Below, piece after piece: positions 3,985 through 26,865 of a stretch of 64,000 nucleotides of DNA. The translations under genes were made by a program, and so were the position numbers. Under the pieces are notes generated by a model. That model did not search any database. It worked only from the letters and a program-made list of their open reading frames with translations, and was not told where the DNA came from. The stretch is taken from IMG/VR virus record IMGVR_UViG_3300027668_000008, positions 124,001 through 188,000 of that record. One strand, written 5' to 3'. The stretch's first letter is position 1; every line of letters starts with the position of its first letter.

Positions 3985-4061
3985 TGGCGCACCCTACAGG
4001 ACTCGAACCTATTACCTCTGGTTCCGCAAACCAACGCTCTATCCAGATGAGCTAAGGGTGC
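3985..4061 (-). tRNA. tRNA-Arg, anticodon GCG
   Basis: GCACCCT/AGGGTGC acceptor stem, A20, anticodon arm TTGGT-TTGCGGA-ACCAG, TTCGAGT T-loop, encoded CCA. Confidence 0.9.
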
Positions 4062-4072
4062 CTTTATAGTTT

Positions 4073-4148
4073 TGGTGGAGGATACAGGGATCGAACCTGC
4101 TACCTCCTGAATGCAAATCAGGCGCTCTCCCAGATGAGCTAATCCCCC
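4073..4148 (-). tRNA. tRNA-Ala, anticodon TGC
   Basis: GGGGGAT/ATCCTCC stem with G3:U70, arm CCTGA-TTTGCAT-TCAGG, encoded CCA. Confidence 0.95.
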
Positions 4149-4181
4149 AAAACTAAATTCTTTTTGTAACATACTAATACT

Positions 4182-4210
4182 ATAATATAACATTCAACGA
4201 GTGTTGTCAA
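4182..4210 (-). promoter_or_regulatory. sigma70-type promoter for tRNA-Ala/tRNA-Arg
   Basis: TTGACA-N17-TATTAT. Confidence 0.75.
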
Positions 4211-4222
4211 GAGCCATAAAAG

Positions 4223-4312
4223 TGGCGGAGAGACTGGGATTTGAACCCAGGAAAGAGTTGCCCCTTTGCCGGTTTAGTAAACCGGTGCTTTCAACCGCTC
4301 AGCCATCTCTCC
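4223..4312 (-). tRNA. tRNA-Ser (long variable arm), anticodon ACT
   Basis: GGAGAGA/TCTCTCC stem, G73, long variable arm AAAG-GGGCAACT-CTTT, arm CCGGT-TTACTAA-ACCGG, encoded CCA. Confidence 0.88.
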
Positions 4313-4321
4313 GGAGTATTT

Positions 4322-4525
4322 TTATTTAGGTACGATTTCAAAACACTTAACTAGTGCCTGCATATCAGTCAAACCAGCCGCTTTACATTCTGCGTATAAT
4401 TTCTTTCTAGCGCCGACTACTTCGTCTGGTGCTACTTTTATACTTTGCATCCTATTTGATTTTGCATTAGGATTCATGCCACGATATCTGGTATTATGTT
4501 TATTATTTTTGTTACGATCATTCAC
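4322..4525 (-). CDS. Small basic hypothetical protein between tRNAs
   Basis: 67-aa ORF, GTG start. Confidence 0.55.
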   Translation of the reverse strand: MNDRNKNNKHNTRYRGMNPNAKSNRMQSIKVAPDEVVGARKKLYAECKAAGLTDMQALVKCFEIVPK

Positions 4526-4541
4526 GCAATTTATTTTTCTG

Positions 4542-4617
4542 TGGTGCCGCTTCCCGGATTCGAACTGGGCACCTACTGATTACAAATCAGTTGCTCTACC
4601 AAATGAGCTAAAGCGGC
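4542..4617 (-). tRNA. tRNA-Thr, anticodon TGT
   Basis: GCCGCTT/AAGCGGC stem, arm ACTGA-TTTGTAA-TCAGT, encoded CCA. Confidence 0.95.
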
Positions 4618-4920: not shown

Positions 4921-5817
4921 TTATGCTAGTTTGAACATTCCGCCAAAGATGTTATCAACAAATGTACTGTGGTCAATCTGCTCGTAACTTGTGCAGTTCT
5001 CGGGTAGAAACCCTCGATGCCACATATAAACAAAACTAGCAACTACACAGGCGTTAGCATAATGCCAACTGTTAAGTGTTCTTCGTCCAGGTATCAGTAA
5101 ATGACTGTGTTTTACTAAATCTTCTGTTTGATACTCTGAACTACTTGTAACCGTAGTATGGAACAATGTTTCTGTGTGCCAATCAACTTTACTAGCATCA
5201 ACGTTGTCGGTATCTGCTATCCAGTTTGTTTGTATGTCGATATTATCATCTCCTAGCCATGAATCAATTTCACTAGCGAAAAAATATTTATTTTGTAACT
5301 TAATAAGTTTAGGTTGCCCTAATACGTTATTCATTACTTCTTGGTAATCTTCTAATGACAATCCAGGTAAAGCATTTTCACCTGTTTCACTAGTTTTAGA
5401 AATTCCTGTAAAATGTTTGATAGACTTTACATTCTCGTTTACATTAACAATACGTTTAATCCACATATCCGTTGCCGCATATTGTAAATTAATATCATCT
5501 AAAATAATGTTATTGTGCGGTGCTACGTCATCTTGTAATGCAAATGTACAAAGTAACGGTATTCCGAATTCTGAACATAAGCCTACTATATTGTCATCTT
5601 CATAGTTTGGGTTTGTACAAACTACAATGTCAGCACCTCTGACAATATCATGCATTGTTAGTGTTGATGTAAATTTTCTAACATATGCTGGGTTCAAATA
5701 ATTATCACCAAAACAAGTAACTTGAATTTCATCATCGAACTGTACTGCATTAATTTCAAGTAATGTTTTTACGGCATATAAATTTTTGCCATCGCCTACT
5801 ATGTGTATATTAATCAT
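4921..5817 (-). CDS. Rossmann-fold protein, saccharopine dehydrogenase / homospermidine synthase-like (divergent)
   Basis: N-terminal IHIVGDG, DIVRGADIVVCT and CSEFGIPLL resemble the NAD(P)-binding domain of this family. Confidence 0.4.
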   Translation of the reverse strand: MINIHIVGDGKNLYAVKTLLEINAVQFDDEIQVTCFGDNYLNPAYVRKFTSTLTMHDIVRGADIVVCTNPNYEDDNIVGLCSEFGIPLLCTFALQDDVAPHNNIILDDINLQYAATDMWIKRIVNVNENVKSIKHFTGISKTSETGENALPGLSLEDYQEVMNNVLGQPKLIKLQNKYFFASEIDSWLGDDNIDIQTNWIADTDNVDASKVDWHTETLFHTTVTSSSEYQTEDLVKHSHLLIPGRRTLNSWHYANACVVASFVYMWHRGFLPENCTSYEQIDHSTFVDNIFGGMFKLA

Positions 5818-6121
5818 TGAACCTCTCCCTAACGTGTTGATAAAAAGTGTCTAATTCTCCACCAAACTGTCCGGTTAGATGGTCTACTGCTTGTAGGCAA
5901 TATTCTGTATTATTGTTGTTCAATTCAATTACAAAGTCTTCGTGCAACTTTGTCCAGTTTTCTAACTGTGGTAAACTGTCAAGGCTTAGTTTAGCAGTAT
6001 CTACAACTGCATATAGTGTAAGGTCTGTGTTCTTTTCTTTCACAGTAACCGTGTCTAGTTCAAGCACGGTGTACCTGTCTCTTAATGCTTCTGCTTGTTT
6101 TTTACCATATACTATGTGCAT
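5810..6121 (-). CDS. Stand-alone homologue of the adenylate cyclase C-terminal region
   Basis: MHIVYGKKQAEALRDRYTVLELDTVTVKEK aligns by eye with LTLLVGESSVSDEYTFIELDKIAVKGK of the cyclase at 9030-11063; the helical tail (LHEDF..ELDTFYQHVRER vs EHDKY..ELHNYYEVMSER) also aligns; ATG at 6121. Confidence 0.65.
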   Translation of the reverse strand: MHIVYGKKQAEALRDRYTVLELDTVTVKEKNTDLTLYAVVDTAKLSLDSLPQLENWTKLHEDFVIELNNNNTEYCLQAVDHLTGQFGGELDTFYQHVRERFND

Positions 6122-6201
6122 CTTTGCCTCTCTTGAATAACTTATTATACTAGTACTTATCTTCTTCAAAGATAGGTAAATAATAATGTAAGTTAAGTAT
6201 T

Positions 6202-6230
6202 ATAATAACAGAATTATGTTGTTATGTCAA
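6202..6230 (-). promoter_or_regulatory. sigma70-type promoter for the 6121-4696 operon
   Basis: TTGACA-N17-TATTAT. Confidence 0.7.
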
Positions 6231-6239
6231 GGAGAATGT

Positions 6240-6518
6240 ATGGATATTTTTAAACTCATAGCAGAACTAGGTTTCCCTATTGCAGGTGCTTTAGCGGCTG
6301 GCTTCTTTGTCTTTACAACAGTAAAATTTATACTTGCAAGTGTAACTAGTAGTATTCAAGGGCTAAAAGGTATTGTAGGCAGTTTAGACAACCGTGTACA
6401 AACAATGAATAACGACTTGGTTAAAATGGATTCATTAATAAGTTATGCATTTGGCGTTAAACCAAATGTAGACAGAATTGCCGCTAATGAAGGCAAAGAA
6501 GACGCAAGGAGAGACTAA
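6240..6518 (+). CDS. Small membrane protein with GFPI motif, paralogue 1 (one TM plus coiled coil)
   Basis: ATG 6240 with GGAGA RBS; LGFPIAGALAAGFFVF, then LDNRVQTMNNDL. Confidence 0.8.
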   Translation: MDIFKLIAELGFPIAGALAAGFFVFTTVKFILASVTSSIQGLKGIVGSLDNRVQTMNNDLVKMDSLISYAFGVKPNVDRIAANEGKEDARRD

Positions 6519-6802
6519 TGGCAGATATAGATATTAACCAAACAGTGGAAGCACCACCCGTTGATGATGGTTGCATTACTGAATGTTTTGGCGAAGCAGA
6601 CAGAGTTGGTGTAGAGTTCACTGACGCCGGTGTAGTTAAAAATATTACAATAGATGATAGTGTTTCCGGTATAGGTGATGTACAAGCAGGTATAGAATTT
6701 ATCTATAATATGCGAGAACATATGGTAGATATTAGTGTAGCCACAGTATATGCAATAACTGTGTATGCTCTTGTTTTATGGATTAAAAGGAAGTTAAGAT
6801 AG
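6518..6802 (+). CDS. Small acidic protein with C-terminal TM helix
   Basis: TAATG coupling; C-terminal hydrophobic helix followed by KRKLR. Confidence 0.75.
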   Translation: MADIDINQTVEAPPVDDGCITECFGEADRVGVEFTDAGVVKNITIDDSVSGIGDVQAGIEFIYNMREHMVDISVATVYAITVYALVLWIKRKLR

Positions 6803-6814
6803 TGATATTTAAAC

Positions 6815-7135
6815 ATGATAGTAACAGATTTAATTAGCGATTACGGATTTCCTATTGTTGCCGCGGTGGGCATGGGATATTTCGTATATTATATATGGAA
6901 ATGGGTAACTATTGAAGTTAAACCTTTAATTGGCGCAACTAGTGGAACACTTATAGGGTTAATTGACCGTATAAGAATGCTCGATAACGACATGATAAGA
7001 TTAACACAAAAGATTAACATGGTTATAGAGTTCAAAGAAGAATACGAAAAACTAACGGGGAAGAAACTCGCAATGACTGTCGATGACATCGAATCGATTA
7101 AGAAAGAGAACTTAAAGAATGCTAAAAAGAAATAA
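6815..7135 (+). CDS. Small membrane protein with GFPI motif, paralogue 2
   Basis: YGFPIVAAVGMGYFVYYIW, then LIDRIRMLDNDMIRL; clearly similar to 6240-6518. Confidence 0.8.
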   Translation: MIVTDLISDYGFPIVAAVGMGYFVYYIWKWVTIEVKPLIGATSGTLIGLIDRIRMLDNDMIRLTQKINMVIEFKEEYEKLTGKKLAMTVDDIESIKKENLKNAKKK

Positions 7136-7268
7136 CAACTGGCTTAATAGTCAAAATACTGCTACTAAAATATATTTAAAATCACAACCTATATGGCATG
7201 ATAAAGATATGCTTATCGTAATTACTGTTGCTTTATTGTCTGGATTTCTTGTAGGACTTGCAGTTTAA
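7119..7268 (+). CDS. 49-aa membrane protein (QPIWHD motif), not in the ORF track
   Basis: Manual translation MLKRNNNWLNSQNTATKIYLKSQPIWHDKDMLIVITVALLSGFLVGLAV; overlaps the end of 6815-7135. Confidence 0.65.
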   Translation: MLKRNNNWLNSQNTATKIYLKSQPIWHDKDMLIVITVALLSGFLVGLAV

Positions 7269-8241
7269 CAATTGGTAAGAATTTCCATTGTAATACGTTA
7301 TTATCTTTACAATAGTCTTCAAACCTATGTCTAATTGCAACAACATTATCTGCACCATATTTAATTCTAGTTGGCAAGTATGTAAAGATATTAGAACGCC
7401 ATATGCTAGAACCAGGCTTTATCCAGGAAAAATCTTCTATAATATCCTTATTAAGGAATTCAACTGGAATAGATTCAAACCAATCCCAAAAATCTTCTCT
7501 GTCTATACTATCAGGTAACTGATTTAATACCGTTTCTTTATTGGTATAAATTTCTTTGTAGTACTCGATACTGTGTTTGCTTATATCATAAAACACAACT
7601 GTGTCAGGTATTACGTTATTTTTATAATATTCAGTTAATGTTATAAATGGTTTGTTACCAGCACACAATAAGTAAAGTGTTTTATCATAAGAGTAAAATT
7701 TATCGTATTGTTCTTTGCTACAATCTTTGTACACAGGTTCTGTGTTTTCCACATATAACCTATCTAAGTCTAAATTATAGTTGTGTTCGGTTTCCCAATC
7801 ATCATCAGTTTTGACAAATGTATCCAATCCAACTTCTTTAGAAAACCATTTTATTGTTGTATTAACAGGAACATCTTGTACAAACGTATCAGATCCTGAC
7901 ACAAACCAATCATGATTTAATCGTATAACAAAACAAAAACTATTCATGTTTTTAAATGCAATAATATCCGGTTCATCTTTAATTGCTTCTTTTACAAAAT
8001 CTAACATTAATTCGTTACGCAAATATGTACCTTCTCGAACGATAAGTGCGTAATCTGCCTTGTTTCTGAGGTTAGTAAGAGTACTGTCTAATGTACCAGT
8101 AATTTTAAATATATCAATATGTTCGTTATCTGCTACAGTATTATCATCTCTGATCAATCCCATATCAAATATGTTTGACCAAGTTATGTTGTGTAAGTAC
8201 TCGTCACTTGTACAATTTAATGCTACTGCTACTAAATTCAT
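7222..8241 (-). CDS. Hypothetical protein
   Basis: 339-aa ORF coupled to the upstream hydroxylase. Confidence 0.7.
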   Translation of the reverse strand: MNLVAVALNCTSDEYLHNITWSNIFDMGLIRDDNTVADNEHIDIFKITGTLDSTLTNLRNKADYALIVREGTYLRNELMLDFVKEAIKDEPDIIAFKNMNSFCFVIRLNHDWFVSGSDTFVQDVPVNTTIKWFSKEVGLDTFVKTDDDWETEHNYNLDLDRLYVENTEPVYKDCSKEQYDKFYSYDKTLYLLCAGNKPFITLTEYYKNNVIPDTVVFYDISKHSIEYYKEIYTNKETVLNQLPDSIDREDFWDWFESIPVEFLNKDIIEDFSWIKPGSSIWRSNIFTYLPTRIKYGADNVVAIRHRFEDYCKDNNVLQWKFLPIVKLQVLQEIQTIKQQ

Positions 8242-8864
8242 ATCAACTTCCTGTAGTTTTCATAAGCCTGTTTCTTAAACTCTGTAGTTTTGCCACCATG
8301 TAAAATAATATGATATCTATGTTCATTGCTATTATTACGAACACTGTGCTTGTTACTTAAATCTAACCATGCACCTTTATTTTGTTTAAATGGTACAACT
8401 CCGACATCCTCCATAACAAATTCACATCCTTCTGGATTGTTAATTGCAATGTTGATAGGACCTAATCTACTTTTATCATAATCTCTATGTGATTCAATAT
8501 AACCACCGGGTGCTACAGACATAATTCTAATTCTATCAAAGTCTATAAAATAATTTTGTTCTAACAACCATTGTTTAAGTGAAGGTATACTGTTACTTGC
8601 GTTAGTCCAATCAAAGACTGCATCTTCTTCTTGTATATCATAAAACATTGGAGCATTAGTGAATTCATCACCTTGCCCGTGCATAACTAATGATGACCAA
8701 CCTTTTGATTGGTCTTCTCTGTGATTATAAAAGTTATCTTGTGCTTGTGATATTTCTTGTAAAATATTTTCTACAGGCATATTGACATCGAACATTAAAT
8801 AAGGTAACTTACTATCTGTTCTTAATTCAATTGGATTTTTACATTCTTTGTTAAAACTTAACAT
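8238..8864 (-). CDS. Aspartyl/asparaginyl beta-hydroxylase-like 2OG-Fe(II) oxygenase
   Basis: IRIMSVAPGGYIESHRDY (HxD) and HSVRNNSNEHRYHIILHG; likely start ATG 8864 (ORF extends to 8927). Confidence 0.8.
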   Translation of the reverse strand: MLSFNKECKNPIELRTDSKLPYLMFDVNMPVENILQEISQAQDNFYNHREDQSKGWSSLVMHGQGDEFTNAPMFYDIQEEDAVFDWTNASNSIPSLKQWLLEQNYFIDFDRIRIMSVAPGGYIESHRDYDKSRLGPINIAINNPEGCEFVMEDVGVVPFKQNKGAWLDLSNKHSVRNNSNEHRYHIILHGGKTTEFKKQAYENYRKLI

Positions 8865-8883
8865 TTGTCGATTGTCTTTTCTT

Positions 8884-9021
8884 TTATTCTTGTTCGCCGT
8901 TTGCTTTACTTTTTGCGTAGGCGGCATCTGCTCTCATTTGTGTTGCTATTCGCAGTTGCATATAATCTCTTAAAGGTGGCTTAGTCTTTGGTTTATCTTT
9001 TCGTGCAGAACCCAGACTCAA
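8884..9021 (-). CDS. Possible 45-aa basic peptide (TTG start)
   Basis: Manual translation MSLGSARKDKPKTKPPLRDYMQLRIATQMRADAAYAKSKANGEQE fills the intergenic gap. Confidence 0.35.
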   Translation of the reverse strand: MSLGSARKDKPKTKPPLRDYMQLRIATQMRADAAYAKSKANGEQE

Positions 9022-9029
9022 CGAATCTT

Positions 9030-11063
9030 TTATTTGCTTGTTGCGATGAATACTCCGTCCCATTGTTTTGTACCTTTTCTTTTTAGCTCATGGGCCCGTT
9101 CAGACATTACTTCATAGTAATTATGAAGCTCTTCAGGGCATACACTTTGTAATTTGGAAATTTGATTAATCGCTAGATCCCACTTGGAATCTCTATATAA
9201 CTGCAAATATTTATCATGTTCCTTGACGTAATTAACTGCACACTCACTAAACAAAGCAGTATAAATGGTAGCCGGTACTGTCTTGCCCTTAACTGCTATT
9301 TTATCTAGTTCTATGAATGTGTATTCGTCGGATACTGAACTTTCACCAACTAACAATGTTAAACCGTACTCTTTACTTTGCCCCTCTAGTCTTGCCGCTA
9401 AATTAACACAATCACCCAAAACTGAGTAGTCAAAACGTTGATTAGACCCCATATTACCTACCACAGCACTACCTGTGTTAATACCAACACCAATTTTAAT
9501 AGGCATTAATCCTTCGGATTCTAATTCTTTATTAAGTTTTCTTAATGCAACAAACATCTCATCAGCAGTTTTAATTGCTAATTCACGTTGTTTAGGAACA
9601 TCTAAAGGTGCGTTCCAAAATGCCATAAGTGCATCACCAATATACTTGTCTACTGTGCCTTCGTTTTTCATAACAATATCTGTCATAGGTGTCATGTACC
9701 TATTAATTAAAGAAGTTAACCCTTGTGGATTTGTTTTGTATTGTTCACTAATAGGAGTAAATCCTCTAATGTCACTAAACAATAAAGTTAACTCTCTTGT
9801 ATCGCCACCTAACTTTAATAGTTCTGGATTTTGTTGTAATTTCTTAACCATAGCAGGTGCTAGATAGTGCTCAAACTGTTTTTTAATTTGTTGTTTTAAA
9901 CTAAACTCTTTTACAAATCTATTAAACACTGCATGAAAGCCTGTAAGTACAAATACTATTAATGGCATTGTTACATCGAGCAAATACAAATAGTGTTGCC
10001 ATGCATACAATGAACCATATACTAATCCTGCACTAACACTTAATATCGTAAGTCCAACAATATAATATGGTAATCTAACACTTATTAAAATAATAAGGAG
10101 ACCTAACGTAACAGAAGTTAGTAATTCAACTAGCACGGCCCAATACGGGCGTTGTATCTGGTCTCCGTCGATAACTGTTTGTAGTGTTACTGCCGAAGGT
10201 ATATAATTATATTTAGGACCAGTAGGTGTAGCAATTACTCCACCGATGCCTTCTGCTGTCGAACCTATAATAACTGTTTTGCCTGCGAATAAAGAAAAGT
10301 CGTCACTACTTGCACTAATTGTTTCAAACTCTTTATTCCAACGTAACCATATTTGTCCATTGGGATCTGTACTAATAATTGGATATCCCGGAACACGAAT
10401 TTTATCTATTCCGCCTTGGTTTGCTTTAATTTGATAACTTGGTTTACCTGTACTAACTCTAATAACTTCGATTGCTATTGATGGGTATGTGTTAGTGCCT
10501 ACTCTCATAATTAAAGGAACACGTCTTACAACACCATCTATCTCATTAGGTGTATTTAGAACACCAACGCCGTCTGCATTTAAGCCTAGTAACGGAATAG
10601 GTCCTAACATACCGGGCCATTCGAACAAATAAGGTACTGCATCACCTATTGTTGCAACTCCTCTTGTTACCGCATTTTTATTTACTTTTAAACTTCCTAC
10701 TTGTGCAATAACAATCCCATTGCCGGCTATCGATTCAACAAATGCTTGGTCACCGCCTAATCTATCATCTTCACTAAACAGTATAGGTATTACAATTACA
10801 CCTGCTCCTGCTTCACGCAACTTCCAAATAAGTTCTGCTAGAACATCACGTTTCCAGGGCCACTGTCCGTATTTTTCAATAGATGCTTCATCTATTGTTA
10901 CAATACCAATGTCGTTGGATACAACCGGAGTATCGGTTTGTTGTAGTAAATCAAACTGTTTAAGTCTCAATATTTCAACTATACTACTATTGCCGTAATG
11001 GAAGAAGGTTAGAACTGCCAATGTTACAAAGGCAGTTAACCAATGCGTTAAATATTTTTTCAT
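9030..11063 (-). CDS. CHASE2-domain class III adenylate cyclase
   Basis: N-terminal TM; CHASE2 motifs IDEASIEKYGQWPWKR and DGVVRRVPL; three TMs; catalytic LFSDIRGFT, DKYIGDALMAF, VGNMGS, DYSVLGDCVNLAARLEG, IAVKGK. Confidence 0.95.
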   Translation of the reverse strand: MKKYLTHWLTAFVTLAVLTFFHYGNSSIVEILRLKQFDLLQQTDTPVVSNDIGIVTIDEASIEKYGQWPWKRDVLAELIWKLREAGAGVIVIPILFSEDDRLGGDQAFVESIAGNGIVIAQVGSLKVNKNAVTRGVATIGDAVPYLFEWPGMLGPIPLLGLNADGVGVLNTPNEIDGVVRRVPLIMRVGTNTYPSIAIEVIRVSTGKPSYQIKANQGGIDKIRVPGYPIISTDPNGQIWLRWNKEFETISASSDDFSLFAGKTVIIGSTAEGIGGVIATPTGPKYNYIPSAVTLQTVIDGDQIQRPYWAVLVELLTSVTLGLLIILISVRLPYYIVGLTILSVSAGLVYGSLYAWQHYLYLLDVTMPLIVFVLTGFHAVFNRFVKEFSLKQQIKKQFEHYLAPAMVKKLQQNPELLKLGGDTRELTLLFSDIRGFTPISEQYKTNPQGLTSLINRYMTPMTDIVMKNEGTVDKYIGDALMAFWNAPLDVPKQRELAIKTADEMFVALRKLNKELESEGLMPIKIGVGINTGSAVVGNMGSNQRFDYSVLGDCVNLAARLEGQSKEYGLTLLVGESSVSDEYTFIELDKIAVKGKTVPATIYTALFSECAVNYVKEHDKYLQLYRDSKWDLAINQISKLQSVCPEELHNYYEVMSERAHELKRKGTKQWDGVFIATSK

Positions 11064-11094: not shown

Positions 11095-12549
11095 CTAATC
11101 TGATTGTGTAAAGGTCGTTGTTCCACAACCAGCGGCATTAGTGCAACTTTGTGTTAAACTATATGTCTTATCTGAACTACCATCTTGGTGTAAATCCAAT
11201 GTACTTGAATACCCAGACATATTAATTGTTGCGGCATGGTCGCCTGATCCATCTTGGTCAACTGAAACAGTTTGGTTACTTCCAACTGTAATGTCTTGAA
11301 AGTGTGTTCCTGTTCCGGCTTGGTCTAAATCTAATGTGTTAGAACTTCCGTTAATATCCACAAACATCATTTTATCGCCATCGTCATTTTGTTGTAAATT
11401 TATATTGTTACTATTTCCTGCAATGTCGACATCCATAAAATGACCCAAGTTACCAACGGCTCCGTCTTCTTCTTGAGTGAAAGTTCCTGTATTACTATTA
11501 CCAACTACATTTAATCTTAAATCATGGTCACCATCATCATCGATATTGTCACCTTGTCGTATTGTCATAGTGTTACTATTTCCGTTAATATCTAGCAAAA
11601 CAGTATTGCCATCACTAAATGATCCTGAGTTATTACCCTGTGTAATTGATAGTGTATTATCGTCGCCAGTTATTTCTGCGTTGTCGATACTGCTGGAAGT
11701 TGTTCCTAAACCTGCAACTAAATTATCATTGTCGTATTGTATAATGTCTATGTTTGCATTATTACCACTTTGTGTAATATAAATTCCGTTGCCACTGTGT
11801 GTTATTCCTCTTGTAGTTGATCTTAAATTAGTTTGTGCAGTTGTAGGTTCTGAAGTATATGATGCTGGACTGAATACGCCTTCCTCTTCAAGTGTTTCTC
11901 CTAAAAAGACATACATTCTTGCTGAACGAGTTGTGTTAGCATTATTAAATTGTGCCTGGTCTAAAGTGATAATTAATTTACCACCATTACTACCATAACC
12001 ATATACTGCCCAAGATTTCCAGCCACTAAGGCCTGATGCTGTATTTGACGCTATCGCCGTACCACCCGATTGCATTGAAAAAAGATTTCTTGTTACCCAT
12101 GAATTTGAAACGGTATATTGAGAACCATTAGCGTGAGAAGTATAGTTTGCCTCACCATTGTATATTGAGATAGCACCTACACTTAATTTACTTTCAACAA
12201 GCGATTCAATGCTCAGCGTTCTAGCGCCATCATGGTCACCATTACCAGCAATTAAAACTGTGCCACCTGCACTAATGTAAGTTTCATATGCTGTCTTACA
12301 GGTACCACCACAACTGTTATTACCTGCTATGTTAATGTGTAAATCTTTACCAGTAAAATCACTTAAAGTAACTGAACCACTATTTGTGCCTGTAACTGTA
12401 AACCCATGACCCTCTAACTCACCTTTTACTTTATTGTACATATTGGTATCAGTATAGTTTATATGAGCTGTTTCGGCAAATGCTTGTATAGGTAATACTA
12501 ATAATAAACTAATTAGACTGATTAATAGTGATCTGATTAACACCGGCAT
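11095..12549 (-). CDS. Large secreted protein: N-terminal globular domain plus C-terminal curlin-like repeats
   Basis: Signal peptide; repeats of type I-x-G-x-x-N-x-x-x-I-x-Q (ITGDDNTLSITQ, INGNSNTMTIRQ, VVGNSNTGTFTQ, IAGNSNNINLQQ, INGSSNTLDLDQ). Confidence 0.8.
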   Translation of the reverse strand: MPVLIRSLLISLISLLLVLPIQAFAETAHINYTDTNMYNKVKGELEGHGFTVTGTNSGSVTLSDFTGKDLHINIAGNNSCGGTCKTAYETYISAGGTVLIAGNGDHDGARTLSIESLVESKLSVGAISIYNGEANYTSHANGSQYTVSNSWVTRNLFSMQSGGTAIASNTASGLSGWKSWAVYGYGSNGGKLIITLDQAQFNNANTTRSARMYVFLGETLEEEGVFSPASYTSEPTTAQTNLRSTTRGITHSGNGIYITQSGNNANIDIIQYDNDNLVAGLGTTSSSIDNAEITGDDNTLSITQGNNSGSFSDGNTVLLDINGNSNTMTIRQGDNIDDDGDHDLRLNVVGNSNTGTFTQEEDGAVGNLGHFMDVDIAGNSNNINLQQNDDGDKMMFVDINGSSNTLDLDQAGTGTHFQDITVGSNQTVSVDQDGSGDHAATINMSGYSSTLDLHQDGSSDKTYSLTQSCTNAAGCGTTTFTQSD

Positions 12550-13600
12550 CTCCTAACTGTACATTATCTACACCAACAAAATTCTGCTTTAATGTTATGT
12601 TATAACTGTAATCTCTATCTAATCGTAGTTCCATAAAATTACCTGCACTATCTTCTTTAATAATAAGGTAACTAGGATCGTTTGTAAATGTTATTCCTGT
12701 TGTTTCGTCGAATCCAATTTTAAAACCATTCCTAGGATCAAATGCTTGTTTAAGTTTTTTGCTTAATTCTGCATTTAATACGACTAGTAAGTCTTGTAAA
12801 AAATCTTGTAATAAGAAGTCAATGTCTAATTCGTTTGCAAGTTCCTCATTTGATTCTTCTAATAAATCTTCATCTAAATCGTTAAATTCTAAAAAGTCAA
12901 TATCTAATGCACTTGATACATCTGATAGTTGCTCTGCTAGTTCTATTGCTTCTTGTAAATCCTTGGGCTTTTGTACGATTAACAAGTTGTTAATCATATT
13001 AGCATCTAAATCCAGTATAATAGGTTTTAAAGGTTTAGATTCAAATGTTGTAACTACTGTTGTTTGAAATGCTTGATTCATTATAACAAATCCTGCATCT
13101 GTTTCAACTTCAATTTCTCCTACATAACAGTTGCCGTTGCTATCGCAACTCGGTAGTAAAATTATAAGACTGCTTCCAATCTCATCTACTGTCATCGTGA
13201 AGTCAGTGCCTCTTACTCCAATGACTGCCGTAGGTGTTTTGATCTTTACATTTTGTTTAAACTTTTTTCCTATTTGCCCACTTGCATACCTAACTGTGCC
13301 TAAACTGGCTTTGATAGATAGTGATCCAATATCATTTGCAGGGTCATAGACAAATTCATCGATTATTACATTACTGTGTGGCGTAATTTCTAATTTAGTA
13401 TCGTCTATAAATTCTATATTTTGTTTATGCTTAAATGTTTCTATTCGGTCCATAGAGAATATATCAGAATCCACATCACCTTGTTCAGTTGTGTCTTCTC
13501 TATAAATCTTACTTGGTCCGTCCGATTTAGTAATTTTACCTATACTGGCAAATCCACTAGTCGGAAGAAAGCAGATTAGTATAACACAGAGCCACTTCAT
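12509..13600 (-). CDS. Secreted FecR-domain protein
   Basis: Signal peptide; FIDDTKLEITPHSNVIIDEF, GTVRYASG, IKTPTAVIGVRGTDF. Confidence 0.85.
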   Translation of the reverse strand: MKWLCVILICFLPTSGFASIGKITKSDGPSKIYREDTTEQGDVDSDIFSMDRIETFKHKQNIEFIDDTKLEITPHSNVIIDEFVYDPANDIGSLSIKASLGTVRYASGQIGKKFKQNVKIKTPTAVIGVRGTDFTMTVDEIGSSLIILLPSCDSNGNCYVGEIEVETDAGFVIMNQAFQTTVVTTFESKPLKPIILDLDANMINNLLIVQKPKDLQEAIELAEQLSDVSSALDIDFLEFNDLDEDLLEESNEELANELDIDFLLQDFLQDLLVVLNAELSKKLKQAFDPRNGFKIGFDETTGITFTNDPSYLIIKEDSAGNFMELRLDRDYSYNITLKQNFVGVDNVQLGDAGVNQITINQSN

Positions 13601-14292
13601 TAGTCGCTCTGCGTAATGTCTATGTCAGAATTGGTGCCAACTGTTGTTAATTGTATTTTGTTGTCATAAATTCCACTTTGTGTAATGTCCACTGTAGTAC
13701 CTTCACCTGTATGATTATGTGTTAAACTATGTCCTGCACTATCTCCTGCGCCTGACATTATATAGTTCGCCGTGTTATCTACTGAACTGCCTAATGCATC
13801 ATTATCCATATCGATGTCTGCATCTGCGTTCGCGGCATTTACTGTTAGTGTGATAGTATCTTCGTTGCTAGTTGCTAAATCTATTGTTCCTACAAAGTTA
13901 GCCGATGATGCACTGGCTCCAATAGCAACTGTTACTGTTGCGTCATCGCCGACTACATCTATGCTCATACTTACTGTTTCACAATTAGAACTTGCACAAG
14001 TTAAAGCAACTGTGTTAGAGTTACCTGTTAAATCTATATTACCTGTGTAAGTAGTACCGTTAATAACTGTAGACACAACGTTACTGTTACCAACTTGATC
14101 AATATTAAATGTCATGCTGTTACCAGTTAAGGATATCGCTGTACTGCTGTTACCTGCCACGTTGTTCTGTCCGTCCTGTGTTATATCCAAGTTTAAATTA
14201 TTACCACTTTGTGTAATATAGATATCATTAGCATACACCGAACTTATAGAACAAACCAGAAACAAGAGCACATAAACTATTTTATTTGTCAT
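13600..14292 (-). CDS. Secreted curlin-like repeat protein
   Basis: Signal peptide then NDIYITQSGNNLNLDITQDGQNN; Gly/Asn/Gln beta-solenoid repeats. Confidence 0.8.
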   Translation of the reverse strand: MTNKIVYVLLFLVCSISSVYANDIYITQSGNNLNLDITQDGQNNVAGNSSTAISLTGNSMTFNIDQVGNSNVVSTVINGTTYTGNIDLTGNSNTVALTCASSNCETVSMSIDVVGDDATVTVAIGASASSANFVGTIDLATSNEDTITLTVNAANADADIDMDNDALGSSVDNTANYIMSGAGDSAGHSLTHNHTGEGTTVDITQSGIYDNKIQLTTVGTNSDIDITQSD

Positions 14293-15355
14293 TTATTTTC
14301 TCCGTCTGTTTCTGCCCTTTTAGTTTAGTTAACGTTTCCCATAGATACATATCAGCAGTGTTTTTAAAACAGTTGCCTCCTGCATTGCAAACGTTAAAGT
14401 CATCTCCCGGTGCTCCTTTTAGCATTTCACTTTCGTGCATAGTTGGGATTGAGTTAATGTCCGGTTTAGAAATAGGCACAGATTTTAATTTAGAACTTTG
14501 GAGAGTCGTATTTTTATCATCTGTATTAATTACTTCACCGGACTTATGGATTAACTTCGTAGTTTTTTGTGTCGTTTTCTTAAACTTCCACAAGCCCTTG
14601 ATTTCGCCTTCTTTGACGATCTCGACAATAGCCTGCTCAATAGCAAGTCTAACTGCCTGATTGGTAGGTTCATTAACTGCTGAACCTATCTCAATTTCTA
14701 ATGCTCTTGTACCTAAATCTAAAAATCTAAATACATCTGAGCTATCTTTATAACTTGCAATAGTCTTATCAACTGCAACCGACAGTAGTATTTCACCAGT
14801 TGATACACTAATAATTCTCATTGCCACAGATACTCTATCTGTTCTGTATTCTTTTGATGCTCCAATACCAAAGTATCTTGCACCTACACCGCCACTTTCA
14901 ATGTTGCTATCGTAACCTATAATAGCACCATCTAATAATAGTCCAGCAAATAACATAGGTTGTAATGCTAGTGCATCTTTACCTTCAAAATTTTCTCTTG
15001 TGCTTCTTATTAATTGTCTTTCTTTTACCAACGAGTCTAAACTAACACGTTCTAATACCTTAAACCATTTACCGCCTCCGGCTTGTTGCAATGCACGAAT
15101 CACATGACTCTCTGCACCTTGCGTTACTGCGGTACTTAATTGACTAAAATTTGTTGAAGGTTTACGTTGTCCTGTTTTATCTCCAAAGCCGTATAGTGCT
15201 ATGGTAATAATAGGTCCGTCGATTGGTGGTAAGTTTAGAAGTGCATTAACCCCTATTGGTATCGAAGCAGGTGGGTCGTATCTGACTTGCTTTACAGGGT
15301 TACCTGCACAAGCACCTAGTAACAATATGATGGATAATGCTACAAATATCCTCAT
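14282..15355 (-). CDS. csgG: Curli secretion channel CsgG (lipoprotein) with C-terminal extension
   Basis: Lipobox LLLGAC; FGDKTGQRKP, STAVTQGA, WFKVLERVSLDSLVKERQLIR, GAIIGYDSN, GVGARYFGIGA, GEILLSV. Confidence 0.95.
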   Translation of the reverse strand: MRIFVALSIILLLGACAGNPVKQVRYDPPASIPIGVNALLNLPPIDGPIITIALYGFGDKTGQRKPSTNFSQLSTAVTQGAESHVIRALQQAGGGKWFKVLERVSLDSLVKERQLIRSTRENFEGKDALALQPMLFAGLLLDGAIIGYDSNIESGGVGARYFGIGASKEYRTDRVSVAMRIISVSTGEILLSVAVDKTIASYKDSSDVFRFLDLGTRALEIEIGSAVNEPTNQAVRLAIEQAIVEIVKEGEIKGLWKFKKTTQKTTKLIHKSGEVINTDDKNTTLQSSKLKSVPISKPDINSIPTMHESEMLKGAPGDDFNVCNAGGNCFKNTADMYLWETLTKLKGQKQTEKINDK

Positions 15356-15358
15356 CCA

Positions 15359-15808
15359 TTAAAACCCGAAGCCACTTAATGGCACCACTAGTTCACTAAA
15401 TGAACCATCGGCTTCAGTTATCTGTACAGTAATTGTACTCGAAGATGTATCTTTAATCCAGTATATAGTTGCACCTTCGACAGTTGCAGTACCACTATTG
15501 GCACCAGTGTCAGAAAACATACTATCAACTAAATTTTTGGATAAGTTTGCGTAAATTCTTGATTCAACGTTTGCTAAGAATTTTGAAAGAGTTTCTTGGG
15601 CGGCATCTCTAACTGCTTGTCTTTCAGCCGCTTCTTTGGCTTTCTTTATTTCAGCCGCACGTTGGAATTGGAGTTGCTCTATACTTAAGACGTGTGTACT
15701 ATAACCTTTTCCACTAAAGGAAGGATTTTTAAATTCATGTGTTAAGTCGCTGGCGTATGCAGGCGTCATAACGAACATAGTCAAGGCTATAGTGATAAAA
15801 AATTTCAT
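15359..15808 (-). CDS. csgF: Curli assembly component CsgF
   Basis: Signal peptide then SDLTHEFKNPSFSG; ITVQITEADGSFSELVVP; directly upstream of csgG. Confidence 0.88.
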   Translation of the reverse strand: MKFFITIALTMFVMTPAYASDLTHEFKNPSFSGKGYSTHVLSIEQLQFQRAAEIKKAKEAAERQAVRDAAQETLSKFLANVESRIYANLSKNLVDSMFSDTGANSGTATVEGATIYWIKDTSSSTITVQITEADGSFSELVVPLSGFGF

Positions 15809-15828: not shown

Positions 15829-15836
15829 TATTTATA
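15829..15836 (-). promoter_or_regulatory. TATAAATA late promoter of the csgF-csgG operon
   Basis: Exact T4 late consensus about 20 nt upstream of csgF. Confidence 0.7.
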
Positions 15837-15906: not shown

Positions 15907-15968
15907 GGTATAGTAAGACGTTATTATACTGGACGGTAGTTTATAGCCCTTTACTACCGTCCTTTTAT
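15907..15968 (+). ncRNA. Candidate small RNA (hairpin plus terminator hairpin)
   Basis: TAAATA at 15897; hairpin GTATAGTAA-GACG-TTATTATAC; hairpin GGACGGTAGT/ACTACCGTCC followed by TTTT; no plus-strand ORF. Confidence 0.45.
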
Positions 15969-16205
15969 TTCTAAAACTTTCATTCTAGCAATGAGACGTG
16001 TTCTTCCCACACCCAAATATCTACTCGCGGCGGCAACTGACTTGTGCATTGTTAACGCCTCAGTTATCTCACTGGTTTCAATTTGTTTAAGTTTGTCTGG
16101 GAGGGTAGTGTCAAGGGATTCAATAGCAGAGCCTGGTGCTCCCCATATGTCGTCCATCATTTCGAACAGTACTGTCTGTTCATTTGTGAAAACGCCCTTG
16201 TTCAT
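15954..16205 (-). CDS. Stand-alone Fis-type HTH protein
   Basis: ITEALTMHKSVAAASRYLGVGRTRLIARMK matches the Fis/NtrC C-terminal HTH; ATG 16205 below TATAAATA 16211-16218. Confidence 0.75.
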   Translation of the reverse strand: MNKGVFTNEQTVLFEMMDDIWGAPGSAIESLDTTLPDKLKQIETSEITEALTMHKSVAAASRYLGVGRTRLIARMKVLEIKGR

Positions 16206-16253
16206 ACTAGTATTTATATACCGCATAAACAAAGGCGTTTCTAAGTGGTTCTG

Positions 16254-26479: not shown

Positions 26480-26745
26480 ATGCAACGATTTCTGTTGCTA
26501 GGTACGTTGCCAACCCCCACGTGCTTATTTTACTAAGCCGCTAATGCCATTTCTGGCTGATAATTGTTATTTGCAATTATAAAGTTTCTTCGCGATAACG
26601 GTGCTTAGATCCCGAGAACTCCACTAACTCTAGTAATTACCTGTCGATCCTATTCATCCCCATATGAAAAATCTGTTGTATTTGGTGGAGATGCCGGGAT
26701 TCGCACCCGGGTCCAGTTTAACTTTTGAATTGCTTCAACGTTCTA
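26480..26745 (-). ncRNA. ssrA: Circularly permuted two-piece tmRNA (alphaproteobacterial type), tag ANNNYQPEMALAA
   Basis: Acceptor piece ends with T-arm and CATCTCCACCA at 26683; 21-nt spacer; coding piece starts GGGGATGAATAGGATCGAC at 26661 (G3:U70); tag ORF 26574-26533; CCTAGCAACAGAA near the 3' end. Confidence 0.93.
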
Positions 26746-26749
26746 AGTA

Positions 26750-26780
26750 TATTTATACACTATTCACTTGACTTTGTCAA
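26750..26780 (-). promoter_or_regulatory. Hybrid sigma70 / late promoter of tmRNA
   Basis: TTGACA-N17-TATAAA, where the -10 is part of TATAAATA. Confidence 0.8.
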
Positions 26781-26865
26781 CCAAATAATATACAAATAAA
26801 GTACTAATATTAAAAATAAAAGATAAGTATTCTATAAAAGCAAAATACATCAACTAAAGGTAATT

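What the first reader, a model, noticed from the sequence alone, without database searches (positions are those of the whole stretch)
6240..7268. Divergent operon of four tiny membrane proteins, including a GFPI paralogue pair
Two paralogues share D/E-x-G-F-P-I-x-A-A-x-x-x-G-x-F, followed by a heptad segment (LDNRVQTMNND / LIDRIRMLDND). They are interleaved with two C-terminally anchored peptides, one of which the ORF track missed. A TAAATA box lies at 6177. Inference: a hetero-oligomeric inner-membrane complex (scaffold, channel or energiser) serving the cyclase/curli module.
Basis: partly seen in the sequence, partly recalled or inferred. Interest (0 to 1): 0.6.

Follow-up and report, generated by a model that had tools for sequence, protein, structure and literature searches.

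The report
Phage holin-like membrane protein pair
Two related small membrane proteins of a marine T4-like phage, made late in infection and usually encoded next to the phage's puzzling curli-secretion genes, sit directly beside the cell-wall-degrading enzyme in relatives that lack curli genes, so they most likely help time host-cell lysis.

Summary
Window 6240-7268 (+) carries four small ORFs: paralogues A1 (92 aa) and A3 (106 aa), interleaved with the C-terminally anchored S2 (94 aa) and S4 (49 aa). The window is a marine T4-like myophage related to Pelagibacter phage HTVC008M and Methylophilales phage Melnitz.

A1 and A3 belong to PHROG 18771, annotated "unknown function". A profile search found 917 clusters, all viral or metagenomic. 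The two types always occur as a tandem pair behind a conserved TAAATA late-promoter box.

However, curli-less phages carry the pair inside lysis cassettes. There it is followed at once, or after one membrane-protein gene, by endolysins of three unrelated types, or it is preceded by endolysin plus spanins. In two contigs the curli module lies between the pair and the spanins. A Clostridium phage gene just downstream of an endolysin is a remote homologue (hhalign 97%).

Best reading (0.55): a holin-type, lysis-timing inner-membrane pair. S2 and S4 are accessory. Main rival (0.2): an inner-membrane part of the curli/cyclase module. No function has been tested experimentally.

The parts
6177..6182 (+). 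TAAATA box, T4-type late-promoter-like, 63 nt upstream of the A1 start
   Evidence: Read from sequence. The same box is upstream of A1 in 93% of 68 distinct related loci, against 12% of shuffles and 3% of random 70-mers. It is absent upstream of A3 (3%).
6230..6234 (+). Shine-Dalgarno AGGAG, 5 nt before the A1 ATG
   Evidence: Read from sequence. It supports 6240, not 6216, as the start.
6240..6518 (+). A1-type gene (92 aa): acidic N-tail, GFPI membrane helix, long helical stalk, conserved C-terminal ...DRIAxxEGKxDARRD
   Evidence: phrog_18771 at 1.3e-28. AlphaFold2 gives one helix over residues 3-71, pLDDT 80. In the A1-type alignment G11, G21, L49, M56, D64, R90 and D92 are invariant. RNA-library contigs cover 6211-6518.
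6518..6802 (+). S2 (94 aa): acidic N-terminal domain, C-terminal membrane anchor followed by KRKLR; accessory gene
   Evidence: It has 162 homologues. In other phages they lie just upstream of, and overlapping, the CHASE2 cyclase (L216-L218), or just upstream of the i-/o-spanin genes (L219-L221). An RNA-library contig spans 6516-7023 with no differences.
6815..7135 (+). A3-type gene (106 aa): same N-terminal GFPI helix, RMLDNDMIRL stalk motif, variable charged tail
   Evidence: phrog_18771 at 1.5e-30 and phrog_4898 'holin' at 1.8e-5 over residues 3-20. AlphaFold2 gives a helix over residues 12-81, pLDDT 88. It is the paralogue of A1.
7119..7268 (+). S4 (49 aa): basic N-terminal part, C-terminal membrane anchor; accessory gene. 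Its last 47 nt overlap the 3' end of the convergent gene 7222-8241.
   Evidence: A profile HMM built from 10 copies finds 30 S4-like ORFs in 211 loci. Of these, 17 lie just after A3 and 11 lie between A1 and A3. Gene callers recorded it on 34 contigs. No RNA-library contig covers it.
6202..6230 (-). Near-consensus sigma-70-like promoter (TTGACA-17-TATTAT, with TG) pointing at the divergent gene 5810-6169
   Evidence: 11 of 12 matches. It implies that the divergent neighbour is early-type and the A1 unit late-type. This is an inference.
9030..11063 (-). CHASE2 adenylate/guanylate cyclase, the end of the curli module nearest the pair (convergent)
   Evidence: PF05226 at 9e-42 and PF00211 at 3e-19; phrog_35576 at 1e-229.
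11095..15808 (-). Rest of the phage T8SS module: curlin-repeat protein, FecR-domain protein, curlin-repeat protein, CsgG (357 aa), CsgF
   Evidence: Pfam hits: CsgG 1e-49, CsgF 3e-14, FecR 1e-7, and sub-threshold Curlin_rpt hits.
15829..15836 (-). Perfect TATAAATA late-promoter box, 20 nt upstream of csgF
   Evidence: Read from sequence. The curli operon and the A1 unit therefore both carry late-type boxes.

Best explanation
A1 and A3 are a co-inherited pair of paralogous, single-pass inner-membrane proteins. They are made late in infection from one transcript and act together in controlling host lysis. They are either a two-subunit holin or a holin with its antiholin or regulator.

Each protein has a short acidic N-tail, probably periplasmic. 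A membrane helix follows, starting at the invariant GFP(I) turn. It continues as a roughly 40-50-residue helical stalk and ends in a charged C-terminal tail, probably cytoplasmic.

The proposed mechanism follows known holins and is inferred, not shown. The proteins accumulate harmlessly in the membrane. At a set time they oligomerise and permeabilise or depolarise it. This gives the endolysin access to the wall, after which the spanins finish the outer membrane.

S2 and S4 are optional small tail-anchored proteins that ride in the same late unit, and their relatives also sit next to spanin genes or the cyclase. In the pelagimyophage/Melnitz lineage the curli (T8SS)/FecR/CHASE2-cyclase module was placed right beside this pair, and in some genomes between it and the spanin/endolysin genes.

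Shown here: paralogy, membrane character, the conserved late-type box, the gene neighbourhoods and the remote homology. Inferred: topology, hetero-oligomerisation, hole formation and timing.
For: 1. Lysis-cassette position in phages with no curli genes.
- L240, L245 and L248: an XhlA-like 71-aa gene (phrog_689 'holin' 6.6e-7), then A1, A3 and a GH24 lysozyme, with overlapping stops and starts in L240, the locus read in detail.
- L246: tail fibre, a 141-aa gene, A1, A3, then an M15 endolysin (phrog_894, 2e-38).
- L236 (69% GC, with an integrase): A1, A3, a 173-aa membrane protein, then a GH108 endolysin.
- L098: A1, A3, a 160-aa membrane protein, then a GH24 lysozyme.
- L092: M15 endolysin, i-spanin (phrog_739), o-spanin (phrog_812), then A1, A3, FecR and the cyclase.
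- Three unrelated endolysin types paired with one membrane-protein family is the mosaic pattern typical of holin genes.

2. In L253 and L093 the curli/cyclase module lies between the pair and the i-/o-spanin genes, with a GH24 endolysin after the spanins in L253.

3. Remote homology. The family profile against the family of Clostridium phage phi8074-B1 gp23, the gene just downstream of endolysin CS74L, gives hhalign probability 97.1%, E=6.6e-11. In the other direction, gp23 hits phrog_18771 at 1.2e-6. Nine of 24 members hit phrog_4898 'holin'. The nearest named ESM-Atlas clusters are YvrJ (0.85) and Holin_BhlA/UviB (0.83), which are leads only.

4. A conserved late-promoter-like box lies before A1 and not before A3.

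5. General holin traits are present: 80-125 aa, one membrane helix and a charged C-terminus.

6. The family is phage-only. All 32 hits in 185,579 species genomes lie on MAG contigs assigned to unrelated phyla.

7. Buchholz et al. 2022 (PMC9004378) never use the word holin and report no lysin-like gene in Melnitz other than gp67.
Against: - No experiment exists for any member.
- Other holin candidates sit in the same cassettes: the 160-173-aa membrane proteins in L098 and L236, and the XhlA-like gene in L240. The pair could therefore be a regulator rather than the hole-former.
- In the window's own genome, the endolysin (GH108), the i-/o-spanins and three other small membrane or lipoprotein genes lie about 50 kb from the pair.
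- The large majority of loci (203 of 245) link the pair to the curli/cyclase module and not visibly to an endolysin.
- The cyclase stays adjacent to the pair even when CsgG/CsgF are inverted away (L033), where the cyclase lies directly upstream of the pair (L158, L167), and in L092, which has FecR and the cyclase but no csgG/csgF.
- Membrane and coiled-coil segments inflate profile-profile scores.
- No Pfam holin family is matched at threshold.
- L088 (pair, then rIIA/rIIB) and L089 (pair, then PstS) show neither type of neighbour.
Confidence: 0.55

Rival explanations
1. The pair is the inner-membrane component of the phage T8SS/FecR/CHASE2-cyclase module. It would act as a membrane anchor, partner or regulator of the cyclase or of curli export, with no direct role in lysis.
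For: - The pair is adjacent to csgF or csgG (55) or the cyclase (22) in 77 of 84 motif-sampled contigs.
- It is adjacent to one of them in every one of the first 80 loci that reaches past the pair.
- Among isolate phages, the pair and CsgG occur in exactly the same genomes: Melnitz (4 records) and HTVC008M (2 records).
- The whole cassette also occurs on a different backbone with a T5-type small terminase (L084).
- L092 has pair-FecR-cyclase without CsgG/CsgF. In L158 and L167 the cyclase lies directly upstream of the pair.
- S2 homologues overlap the cyclase start.
- Both units carry late-type boxes.
Against: - At least seven contigs carry the pair with no curli or cyclase gene in view: L098, L236, L240, L245, L246, L248 and L088. 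There it sits beside endolysins, or beside rIIA/rIIB in L088.
- A remote homologue exists in Gram-positive Clostridium phages, which cannot use an outer-membrane T8SS.
- Canonical bacterial curli systems have no inner-membrane component of this kind (textbook knowledge of csgBAC/csgDEFG).
- Synteny within one abundant phage clade partly reflects shared descent.
Confidence: 0.2
2. A late membrane function unrelated to both lysis and curli, such as superinfection exclusion, membrane remodelling or virion-assembly help. The gene neighbourhoods would then only reflect a hot spot for small late membrane genes.
For: - The slot between A1 and A3 and the slot after A3 collect varied small membrane ORFs.
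- T4-like genomes cluster small membrane genes in plastic regions (general knowledge; Zaragoza-Solas 2020, PMC7029224, describes this region as hypervariable).
- L088 and L089 show neither type of neighbour.
Against: Direct abutment with overlapping start and stop codons onto endolysin genes, recurring in phages of different GC content, habitat and endolysin type, is hard to explain by chance. The same holds for the hhalign link to an endolysin-adjacent Clostridium phage gene.
Confidence: 0.12
3. A spanin-like or membrane-fusion pair: inner-membrane anchored coiled coils that reach across the periplasm to act on the outer membrane, possibly through CsgG/CsgF.
For: The N-terminal anchor plus long helical stalk resembles the i-spanin architecture. 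The pair is adjacent to outer-membrane CsgG/CsgF. No Rz/Rz1-type genes are in view in L240, L246 or L236.
Against: - Both partners are inner-membrane anchored, and neither has a lipobox.
- Phages carrying the pair also carry ordinary Rz-like i-/o-spanins: L092, L253, L093, L230 and the window's own genome.
- Neither protein hits the spanin PHROGs.
- Charge bias suggests the stalk is cytoplasmic.
- The remote homologue is in Gram-positive phages.
Confidence: 0.05

Closest known systems
Melnitz gp97/gp98 (QZI94826/QZI94827) and HTVC008M AGE60345/AGE60346, the two 'hypothetical proteins' just upstream of csgF
   Same: They are direct orthologues: A1 is 75% and 42% identical, A3 54% and 46%. They form the same tandem pair, and the curli/FecR/cyclase module follows.
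   Different: In those phages the module is co-directional and starts right after the pair. In the window the module is inverted (convergent) and two extra genes (7222-8927) lie in between. S2 is absent from both isolates. HTVC008M has an unrelated 41-aa tail-anchored ORF in the S4 position.
Clostridium phage phi8074-B1 gp23 family (phrog_9829), encoded just downstream of endolysin CS74L
   Same: It has the same length (92 aa), the same N-terminal ...LGFPIA...GYFV membrane helix and a coiled-coil stalk. hhalign gives 97.1%, E=6.6e-11.
   Different: It is a single copy rather than a paralogue pair, in a Gram-positive host. The function is equally untested. Similarity is concentrated in the membrane helix and the start of the stalk.
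Small bitopic holin-like proteins of Bacillus prophages: BhlA/BhlB beside BlyA (SPbeta), XhlA/XhlB beside XlyA (PBSX); Pfam Holin_BhlA PF10960 and XhlA PF10779
   Same: The working analogy is two small membrane proteins with coiled-coil parts, encoded together beside the endolysin (recalled knowledge). The ESM-Atlas lists a Holin_BhlA/UviB cluster among the nearest named clusters (0.83). L240 has an XhlA-like gene directly before the pair.
   Different: A1 and A3 have no Pfam match to PF10960 or PF10779. The hosts are Gram-negative. It is a resemblance of architecture and position, not shown homology.
YvrJ family (Pfam PF12841), small Firmicute proteins with a conserved GFP motif
   Same: It shares the N-terminal GFP(I) motif at the start of the membrane helix. 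Seven of 24 members give weak hits, and the nearest named Atlas cluster scores 0.85.
   Different: The best E-value is 0.07, far under the curated cut-off of 29.5 bits. YvrJ proteins are shorter (the Pfam model has 36 positions), and their function is unknown.
T4 holin T with antiholins RI and RIII
   Same: The logic is the same in a T4-like phage: a late single-pass membrane holin whose timing is set by partner proteins (textbook knowledge).
   Different: There is no sequence relation. PF11031 is not found in the window's genome, although the control search rang nowhere either. T has a large periplasmic domain, whereas A1 and A3 have almost none if the N-tail is the periplasmic side.

Membership tests
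PHROG 18771 (unknown function) | Full-length profile match | tested here: met
   A1 1.3e-28, A3 1.5e-30; 24 of 24 aligned relatives match.
Holins (functional class) | Small protein with at least one membrane helix and a hydrophilic, charged C-terminus | tested here: met
   92 and 106 aa. Hydropathy peaks are 1.96 (A1) and 1.41 (A3, marginal). From residue 49 to the end there are about 8-10 K+R and 8-9 D+E.
Holins (functional class) | Encoded beside the endolysin (lysis cassette) | tested here: inconclusive
   Met in relatives L098, L236, L240, L245, L246, L248 and L092. Not met in the window's own genome, where the GH108 endolysin and the spanins lie about 50 kb away.
Holins (functional class) | Late expression | tested here: inconclusive
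   A conserved TAAATA late-type box is present. Contigs from marine RNA libraries cover A1, S2 and A3, but contigs cannot show timing, and DNA carry-over is possible.
Holins (functional class) | Lethal, energy-poison-triggerable permeabilisation of the cytoplasmic membrane that releases the endolysin | not testable with these tools
   Needs expression and lysis assays.
PHROG 4898 (annotated holin) | Profile match | tested here: inconclusive
   Only the N-terminal roughly 18 residues match. A3 gives 1.8e-5 and A1 0.09; 9 of 24 relatives match.
Pfam YvrJ (PF12841) | Score over the curated cut-off of 29.5 bits | tested here: not met
   A3 scores 12.3 bits (E 0.13). The best E-value among relatives is 0.07.
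Pfam Holin_BhlA (PF10960) and XhlA (PF10779) | Profile match | tested here: not met
   No hit at E<=1 for A1, A3 or 22 relatives. There is only an Atlas feature score of 0.83, under the tool's 0.9 lead threshold.
T4 holin T (PF11031) | Profile match | tested here: not met
   No match in the 306,714-bp record. The control search rang in no genome, so this is weak evidence.
Rz-like i-/o-spanins (phrog_739, phrog_812; PF26831) | Profile match; an inner-membrane subunit paired with an outer-membrane lipoprotein | tested here: not met
   A1 and A3 give no spanin hit, and neither has a lipobox. Separate spanins exist in the same genomes.
Sensor histidine kinase (PMC9599517 labels the gene or genes preceding csgF in podophage T8SS clusters this way) | HisKA/DHp with a conserved phospho-acceptor His, plus a HATPase_c domain | tested here: not met
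   There are no kinase Pfam hits. The proteins are only 80-125 aa, and no His column exceeds 27% frequency. I could not check whether the paper's 'HK' genes are this family.
Canonical curli (Csg) components | Match to CsgA/B/C/D/E/F/G families | tested here: not met
   A1, S2, A3 and S4 give no Csg hit. CsgF and CsgG are separate genes at 14282-15808.

The most novel reading that the evidence does not exclude
The pair, S2, the FecR protein, the CHASE2 cyclase and the CsgG/CsgF outer-membrane pore form one integrated, signal-regulated lysis system. A periplasmic sensor (CHASE2/FecR) and cAMP would set when the holin-type pair fires. The T8SS pore would act on the outer membrane at the lysis stage. 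The curli genes of pelagiphages would then be part of the lysis cassette rather than an adhesion or biofilm module.
Probability: 0.15. Interest if true: 0.8.

Novelty: new member of a known kind. Interest (0 to 1): 0.5.

Why it matters
Pelagimyophages and OM43 phages infect some of the most abundant bacteria in the sea. Their lysis control is not understood, and their curli (T8SS) gene cluster has no agreed function. Buchholz et al. (PMC9004378) never use the word holin for Melnitz and speculate that CsgG itself acts like a pinholin.

This analysis gives a concrete, testable candidate for the missing holin-type component: Melnitz gp97/gp98, HTVC008M AGE60345/AGE60346 and the window's A1/A3. 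It also shows that the curli/cyclase module lies next to this pair, and in two contigs between the pair and the spanin genes.

That turns 'what is the phage curli module for?' into a lysis-timing experiment. It also assigns a likely role to a large family, PHROG 18771, with 917 clusters in public metagenomes.

Tried and rejected
- Complex prediction on A1+A3 with my own alignments returned 'no answer' (score 0.01). It is not evidence either way.
- Foldseek of the A3 model against PDB and BFVD found nothing with E<=0.001. A single long helix cannot be typed by fold.
- Pfam finds no family at threshold for any of the four proteins.
- A SAR-type (releasable) membrane helix was considered. The G+A+S+T fraction is only 35% (A1-type) and 28% (A3-type), so I do not claim it.
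- A spanin role was considered and rejected (see rivals).
- A histidine-kinase role was rejected: no kinase domain and no conserved His.
- I could not establish whether the 'HK' genes of PMC9599517 are this family. The deposited podophage 023Pt_psg01 shows no T8SS gene and no family member in its first 50 kb. Five 58-68-kb IMG/VR contigs were fragments of larger phages. L084 shares almost nothing with that podophage, and its record could not be searched.
- The search for related loci with single divergent members found 0 and 1 loci, and a broad alignment was too diverse to seed a scan. I used a back-translated motif scan instead.
- The tree of concatenated pairs (105 rows, quick method) leaves the deep nodes unresolved. 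I draw from it only that curli, lysis and neither contexts are intermixed, not an order of events.
- My tblastn context labels miss divergent endolysins. L246 was first scored 'neither' and later shown to have an M15 endolysin. The 'curli only' count may therefore hide nearby lysis genes.
- No other genetic code was used.
Full report
**What the window is.** The region is AT-rich. It has a tRNA cluster and a permuted alpha-type tmRNA. Its closest isolate relatives are Methylophilales phage Melnitz and Pelagibacter phage HTVC008M, both T4-like Kyanoviridae. The window is bases 124001-188000 of a 306,714-bp IMG/VR virus record. An identical copy of the locus lies on IMGVR_UViG_3300027704_000009 (L003).

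**The observation.** Four + strand ORFs lie at 6240-7268.
- A1: 6240-6518, 92 aa, with AGGAG 5 nt upstream of the start.
- S2: 6518-6802, 94 aa. Its start overlaps the A1 stop (TAATG).
- A3: 6815-7135, 106 aa.
- S4: 7119-7268, 49 aa. It overlaps A3 by 17 nt and the 3' end of the convergent gene 7222-8241 by 47 nt.

A1 and A3 align without gaps over 84 residues (25% identity, E=4e-13). Both match PHROG 18771 at 1e-28 to 1e-30. In a 24-sequence alignment of both types, G11, F12, P13, A17 and L49 are invariant, and G21, F23, K29, R52, N58 and D59 are nearly so.

Hydropathy gives an N-proximal membrane segment in A1 (1.96) and a weaker one in A3 (1.41). S2 (1.93) and S4 (2.67) have C-terminal anchors. 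AlphaFold2 models both paralogues as one long helix that runs from the membrane segment into a stalk: A1 residues 3-71 at pLDDT 80, and A3 residues 12-81 at pLDDT 88. The N-tails are net acidic, and K/R follow the helix in A1-type proteins. By the positive-inside rule this suggests N-out/C-in, which is an inference.

**Expression signals.** The TAAATA box at 6177-6182 is not a chance match. The box is on the sense strand within 70 nt upstream of A1 in 93% of 68 distinct related loci. The upstream sequences are otherwise unalignable. The figure is 12% for shuffles and 3% for random 70-mers from the same loci. Upstream of A3 it is 3%.

The pair therefore looks like one late, gp55-type transcription unit. 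csgF has a perfect TATAAATA at 15829-15836 on the minus strand. The divergent neighbour 5810-6169 has a near-consensus sigma-70-like promoter. Contigs assembled from marine metatranscriptome libraries cover A1, S2 and A3 but not S4. Contigs cannot prove transcription.

**How big the family is.** A profile of the pair finds 917 representative clusters at E<=1e-3, and 328 at E<=1e-10, among 1.84 billion proteins. In 185,579 species genomes, all 32 hits lie on MAG contigs assigned to unrelated phyla such as Pirellulales, Thaumarchaeota, Synechococcus and Legionellales. None is an isolate genome, so these are most likely binned phage contigs. Both an A1-type and an A3-type gene are present in 231 of 245 loci, always in that order. 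The remaining loci are cut by contig ends. The duplication is therefore old, and both copies are kept. This is the best available argument that the two proteins work together. The structure-based binding test gave no answer.

**Linkage to the curli/cyclase module.**
- The window's module lies on the minus strand: cyclase 9030-11063, curlin-repeat protein 11095-12549, FecR 12509-13600, curlin-repeat protein 13600-14292, CsgG 14282-15355 and CsgF 15359-15808.
- In the 80 closest IMG/VR loci, the pair is next to either csgF (co-directional, as in Melnitz and HTVC008M) or the 3' end of the cyclase (convergent, as in the window) wherever the locus reaches past the pair.
- A similarity-independent sample came from a back-translated MLDNDxIRL motif scan (120 loci, all true members). 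Of the 84 loci with at least 1.2 kb downstream, 54 have csgF and one has csgG as the next module gene, and 22 have the cyclase convergent. Two of the other seven have the cyclase directly upstream.
- Among isolate phages, the pair and CsgG occur in exactly the same genomes.
- The cassette also occurs beside a T5-type small terminase gene (L084).

**The second association: lysis cassettes.** Members that have no curli genes nearby sit in lysis cassettes.
- L240, L245, L248 (freshwater): an XhlA-like 71-aa gene (Pfam XhlA 1.3e-3; phrog_689 'holin' 6.6e-7), then A1, A3 and a GH24 lysozyme. Starts and stops overlap in L240.
- L246: tail fibre, a 141-aa gene, A1, A3, then an M15 endolysin.
- L236 (69% GC, with an integrase): A1, A3, a 173-aa membrane protein, then a GH108 endolysin.
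- L098: tail-fibre-like gene, a 79-aa gene, A1, A3, a 160-aa membrane protein (phrog_6637), then a GH24 lysozyme.
- L092: M15 endolysin, i-spanin (phrog_739), o-spanin (phrog_812), then A1, A3, FecR and the CHASE2 cyclase, with no CsgG/CsgF.
- L253 and L093: the curli/cyclase module lies between the pair and the i-/o-spanin genes, and L253 also has a GH24 lysozyme after the spanins. L230 has spanins a few genes upstream.

A remote homologue is Clostridium phage phi8074-B1 gp23. It has the same length, GFPI helix and coil, and it lies directly after endolysin CS74L. Profile-profile comparison gives probability 97.1%, E=6.6e-11. Weaker pointers agree: phrog_4898 'holin' in 9 of 24 members, YvrJ below threshold, and Atlas neighbours YvrJ (0.85) and Holin_BhlA/UviB (0.83).

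**S2 and S4.**
- S2 is not an orphan; it has 162 relatives. One subgroup lies between the FecR-region genes and the cyclase and overlaps the cyclase start (L216-L218). Another lies immediately upstream of i-/o-spanin genes (L219-L221). S2 thus shows the same double association as the pair.
- S4-like ORFs share a W..QN..T..WL..Q..WH..D motif followed by a hydrophobic tail. They occur in 30 of 211 pair-bearing loci, and 28 of these lie inside or right after the pair.
- Other loci carry different small membrane ORFs in the same slots. The core is the pair, and the interleaved peptides are optional.

**Interpretation.** I commit to the following: A1 and A3 are a holin-type, lysis-timing pair of inner-membrane proteins, either a two-subunit holin or a holin plus antiholin or regulator. 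Confidence is 0.55.

Several results together give the classic signature of holin genes:
- Small size, one membrane helix and a charged C-terminus.
- Late-type promoter boxes.
- Phage-only distribution.
- Direct abutment onto endolysins of three unrelated families in phages that differ in GC content, habitat and endolysin type.

Cautions:
- Nothing has been tested experimentally.
- Some cassettes hold other candidate holins.
- In the window's own genome the endolysin and spanin cluster lies about 50 kb away. It comprises the GH108 endolysin, the i- and o-spanins, a 62-aa membrane protein, a 70-aa lipoprotein and an 86-aa membrane protein.
- Most loci show only the curli linkage, and my tblastn labelling under-detects endolysins, as L246 showed.

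The main rival is an inner-membrane partner of the T8SS/FecR/cyclase module (0.2). It keeps real support from the persistent adjacency of the cyclase. The two readings need not exclude each other. The most novel reading still open is that the whole module is a signal-regulated lysis device (0.15).

**Relation to the literature.**
- Zaragoza-Solas et al. 2020 (PMC7029224) count 'two hypothetical proteins' within the curli operon.
- Buchholz et al. 2022 (PMC9004378) never use the word holin and suggest CsgG may act like a pinholin.
[quoted passage not shown] In every locus I examined, the genes preceding csgF are this pair. The pair has no kinase domain and no conserved His. I could not check whether the two are the same genes.
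- I found no paper that assigns a function to this family.

**Limits.**
- Sampling is dominated by abundant marine myophages.
- Context labels rest on tblastn with a few query proteins.
- The tree is short (178 columns) and unresolved at depth.
- Topology, oligomerisation and pore formation are inferences.

Noticed in passing
window 26481-26799 (-): A permuted (two-piece) alpha-proteobacterial-type tmRNA gene, with tag ANNNYQPEMALAA. Melnitz is reported to have the same kind. I did not check for the glutamine riboswitch described there; no Rfam riboswitch reached the gathering score.
   Followed up: partly
window 3985-4617 (-): A cluster of four tRNA genes: Arg-GCG, Ala-TGC, Ser-ACT and Thr-TGT. 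ARAGORN's ACT anticodon for Ser is unusual and may be a mis-call or a modified-A34 tRNA.
   Followed up: no
G000:C1 (whole record, 306,714 bp): The record is about twice the size of Melnitz (141.5 kb) and HTVC008M (147 kb), yet it has no self-match longer than 2 kb, so it is not a simple concatemer. It could be a larger genome or a chimeric assembly. CheckV completeness is given as 87%.
   Followed up: partly
window 7222-8927 (-): Two genes lie between the pair and the cyclase: a 339-aa gene with no family, and a 229-aa Asp/Asn beta-hydroxylase-like gene (PF05118, 3e-9). Among the first 82 loci, tblastn found them only in this phage's own contig (L003), so they are a lineage-specific insertion.
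   Followed up: partly
G000:C1:79300-81300 (-), locus L214: This is the phage's own lysis cluster, outside the window. It holds a GH108 endolysin (169 aa), an i-spanin (161 aa, phrog_739), an overlapping o-spanin with a lipobox (128 aa), a 62-aa membrane protein (phrog_33111), a 70-aa lipoprotein and an 86-aa membrane protein with a charged tail. The last three are alternative holin-type candidates.
   Followed up: partly
window 14282-15355 (-): The window's CsgG is 357 aa, but only residues 1-256 align with the CsgG of HTVC008M and Melnitz (annotated genes 843 and 837 nt). It therefore carries a C-terminal extension of about 100 residues with no known family.
   Followed up: no
window 15954-16232 (-): A 92-aa Fis-type HTH protein (PF02954, 6e-5) is encoded just upstream of csgF. 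A homologue lies near the module in L004, L018, L020 and L025, in the opposite orientation. It may be a regulator of the module.
   Followed up: no
L021:9795-9992, L027:9776-9973, L032:9885-9998, L002:6221-6346: The slot between A1 and A3 and the slot after A3 hold unrelated small membrane ORFs in different phages: a 65-aa two-helix protein, a 65-aa tail-anchored protein, a 37-aa N-anchored peptide and a 41-aa tail-anchored peptide in HTVC008M. This looks like a hot spot for tiny membrane genes.
   Followed up: partly
window 6518-6673: One RNA-library contig (run X16) joins 6518 to 6673 with six other letters in between. A related strain therefore has a different or shorter N-terminal part of S2.
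   Followed up: no
L222-L253 (genome contigs): All 32 family hits in species-representative genomes lie on MAG contigs labelled Pirellulales, Thaumarchaeota, Synechococcus, Bifidobacterium, Legionellales and others. These are most likely phage contigs mis-binned into MAGs, which is a caution for host assignment from such bins.
   Followed up: partly
L088:5624-8741: In one divergent T4-like contig the pair is followed by two small ORFs and then rIIA (phrog_612, 5e-75) and rIIB. PHROGs labels these genes 'lysis inhibitor'. There is no curli gene anywhere on the 12.5-kb contig.
   Followed up: partly
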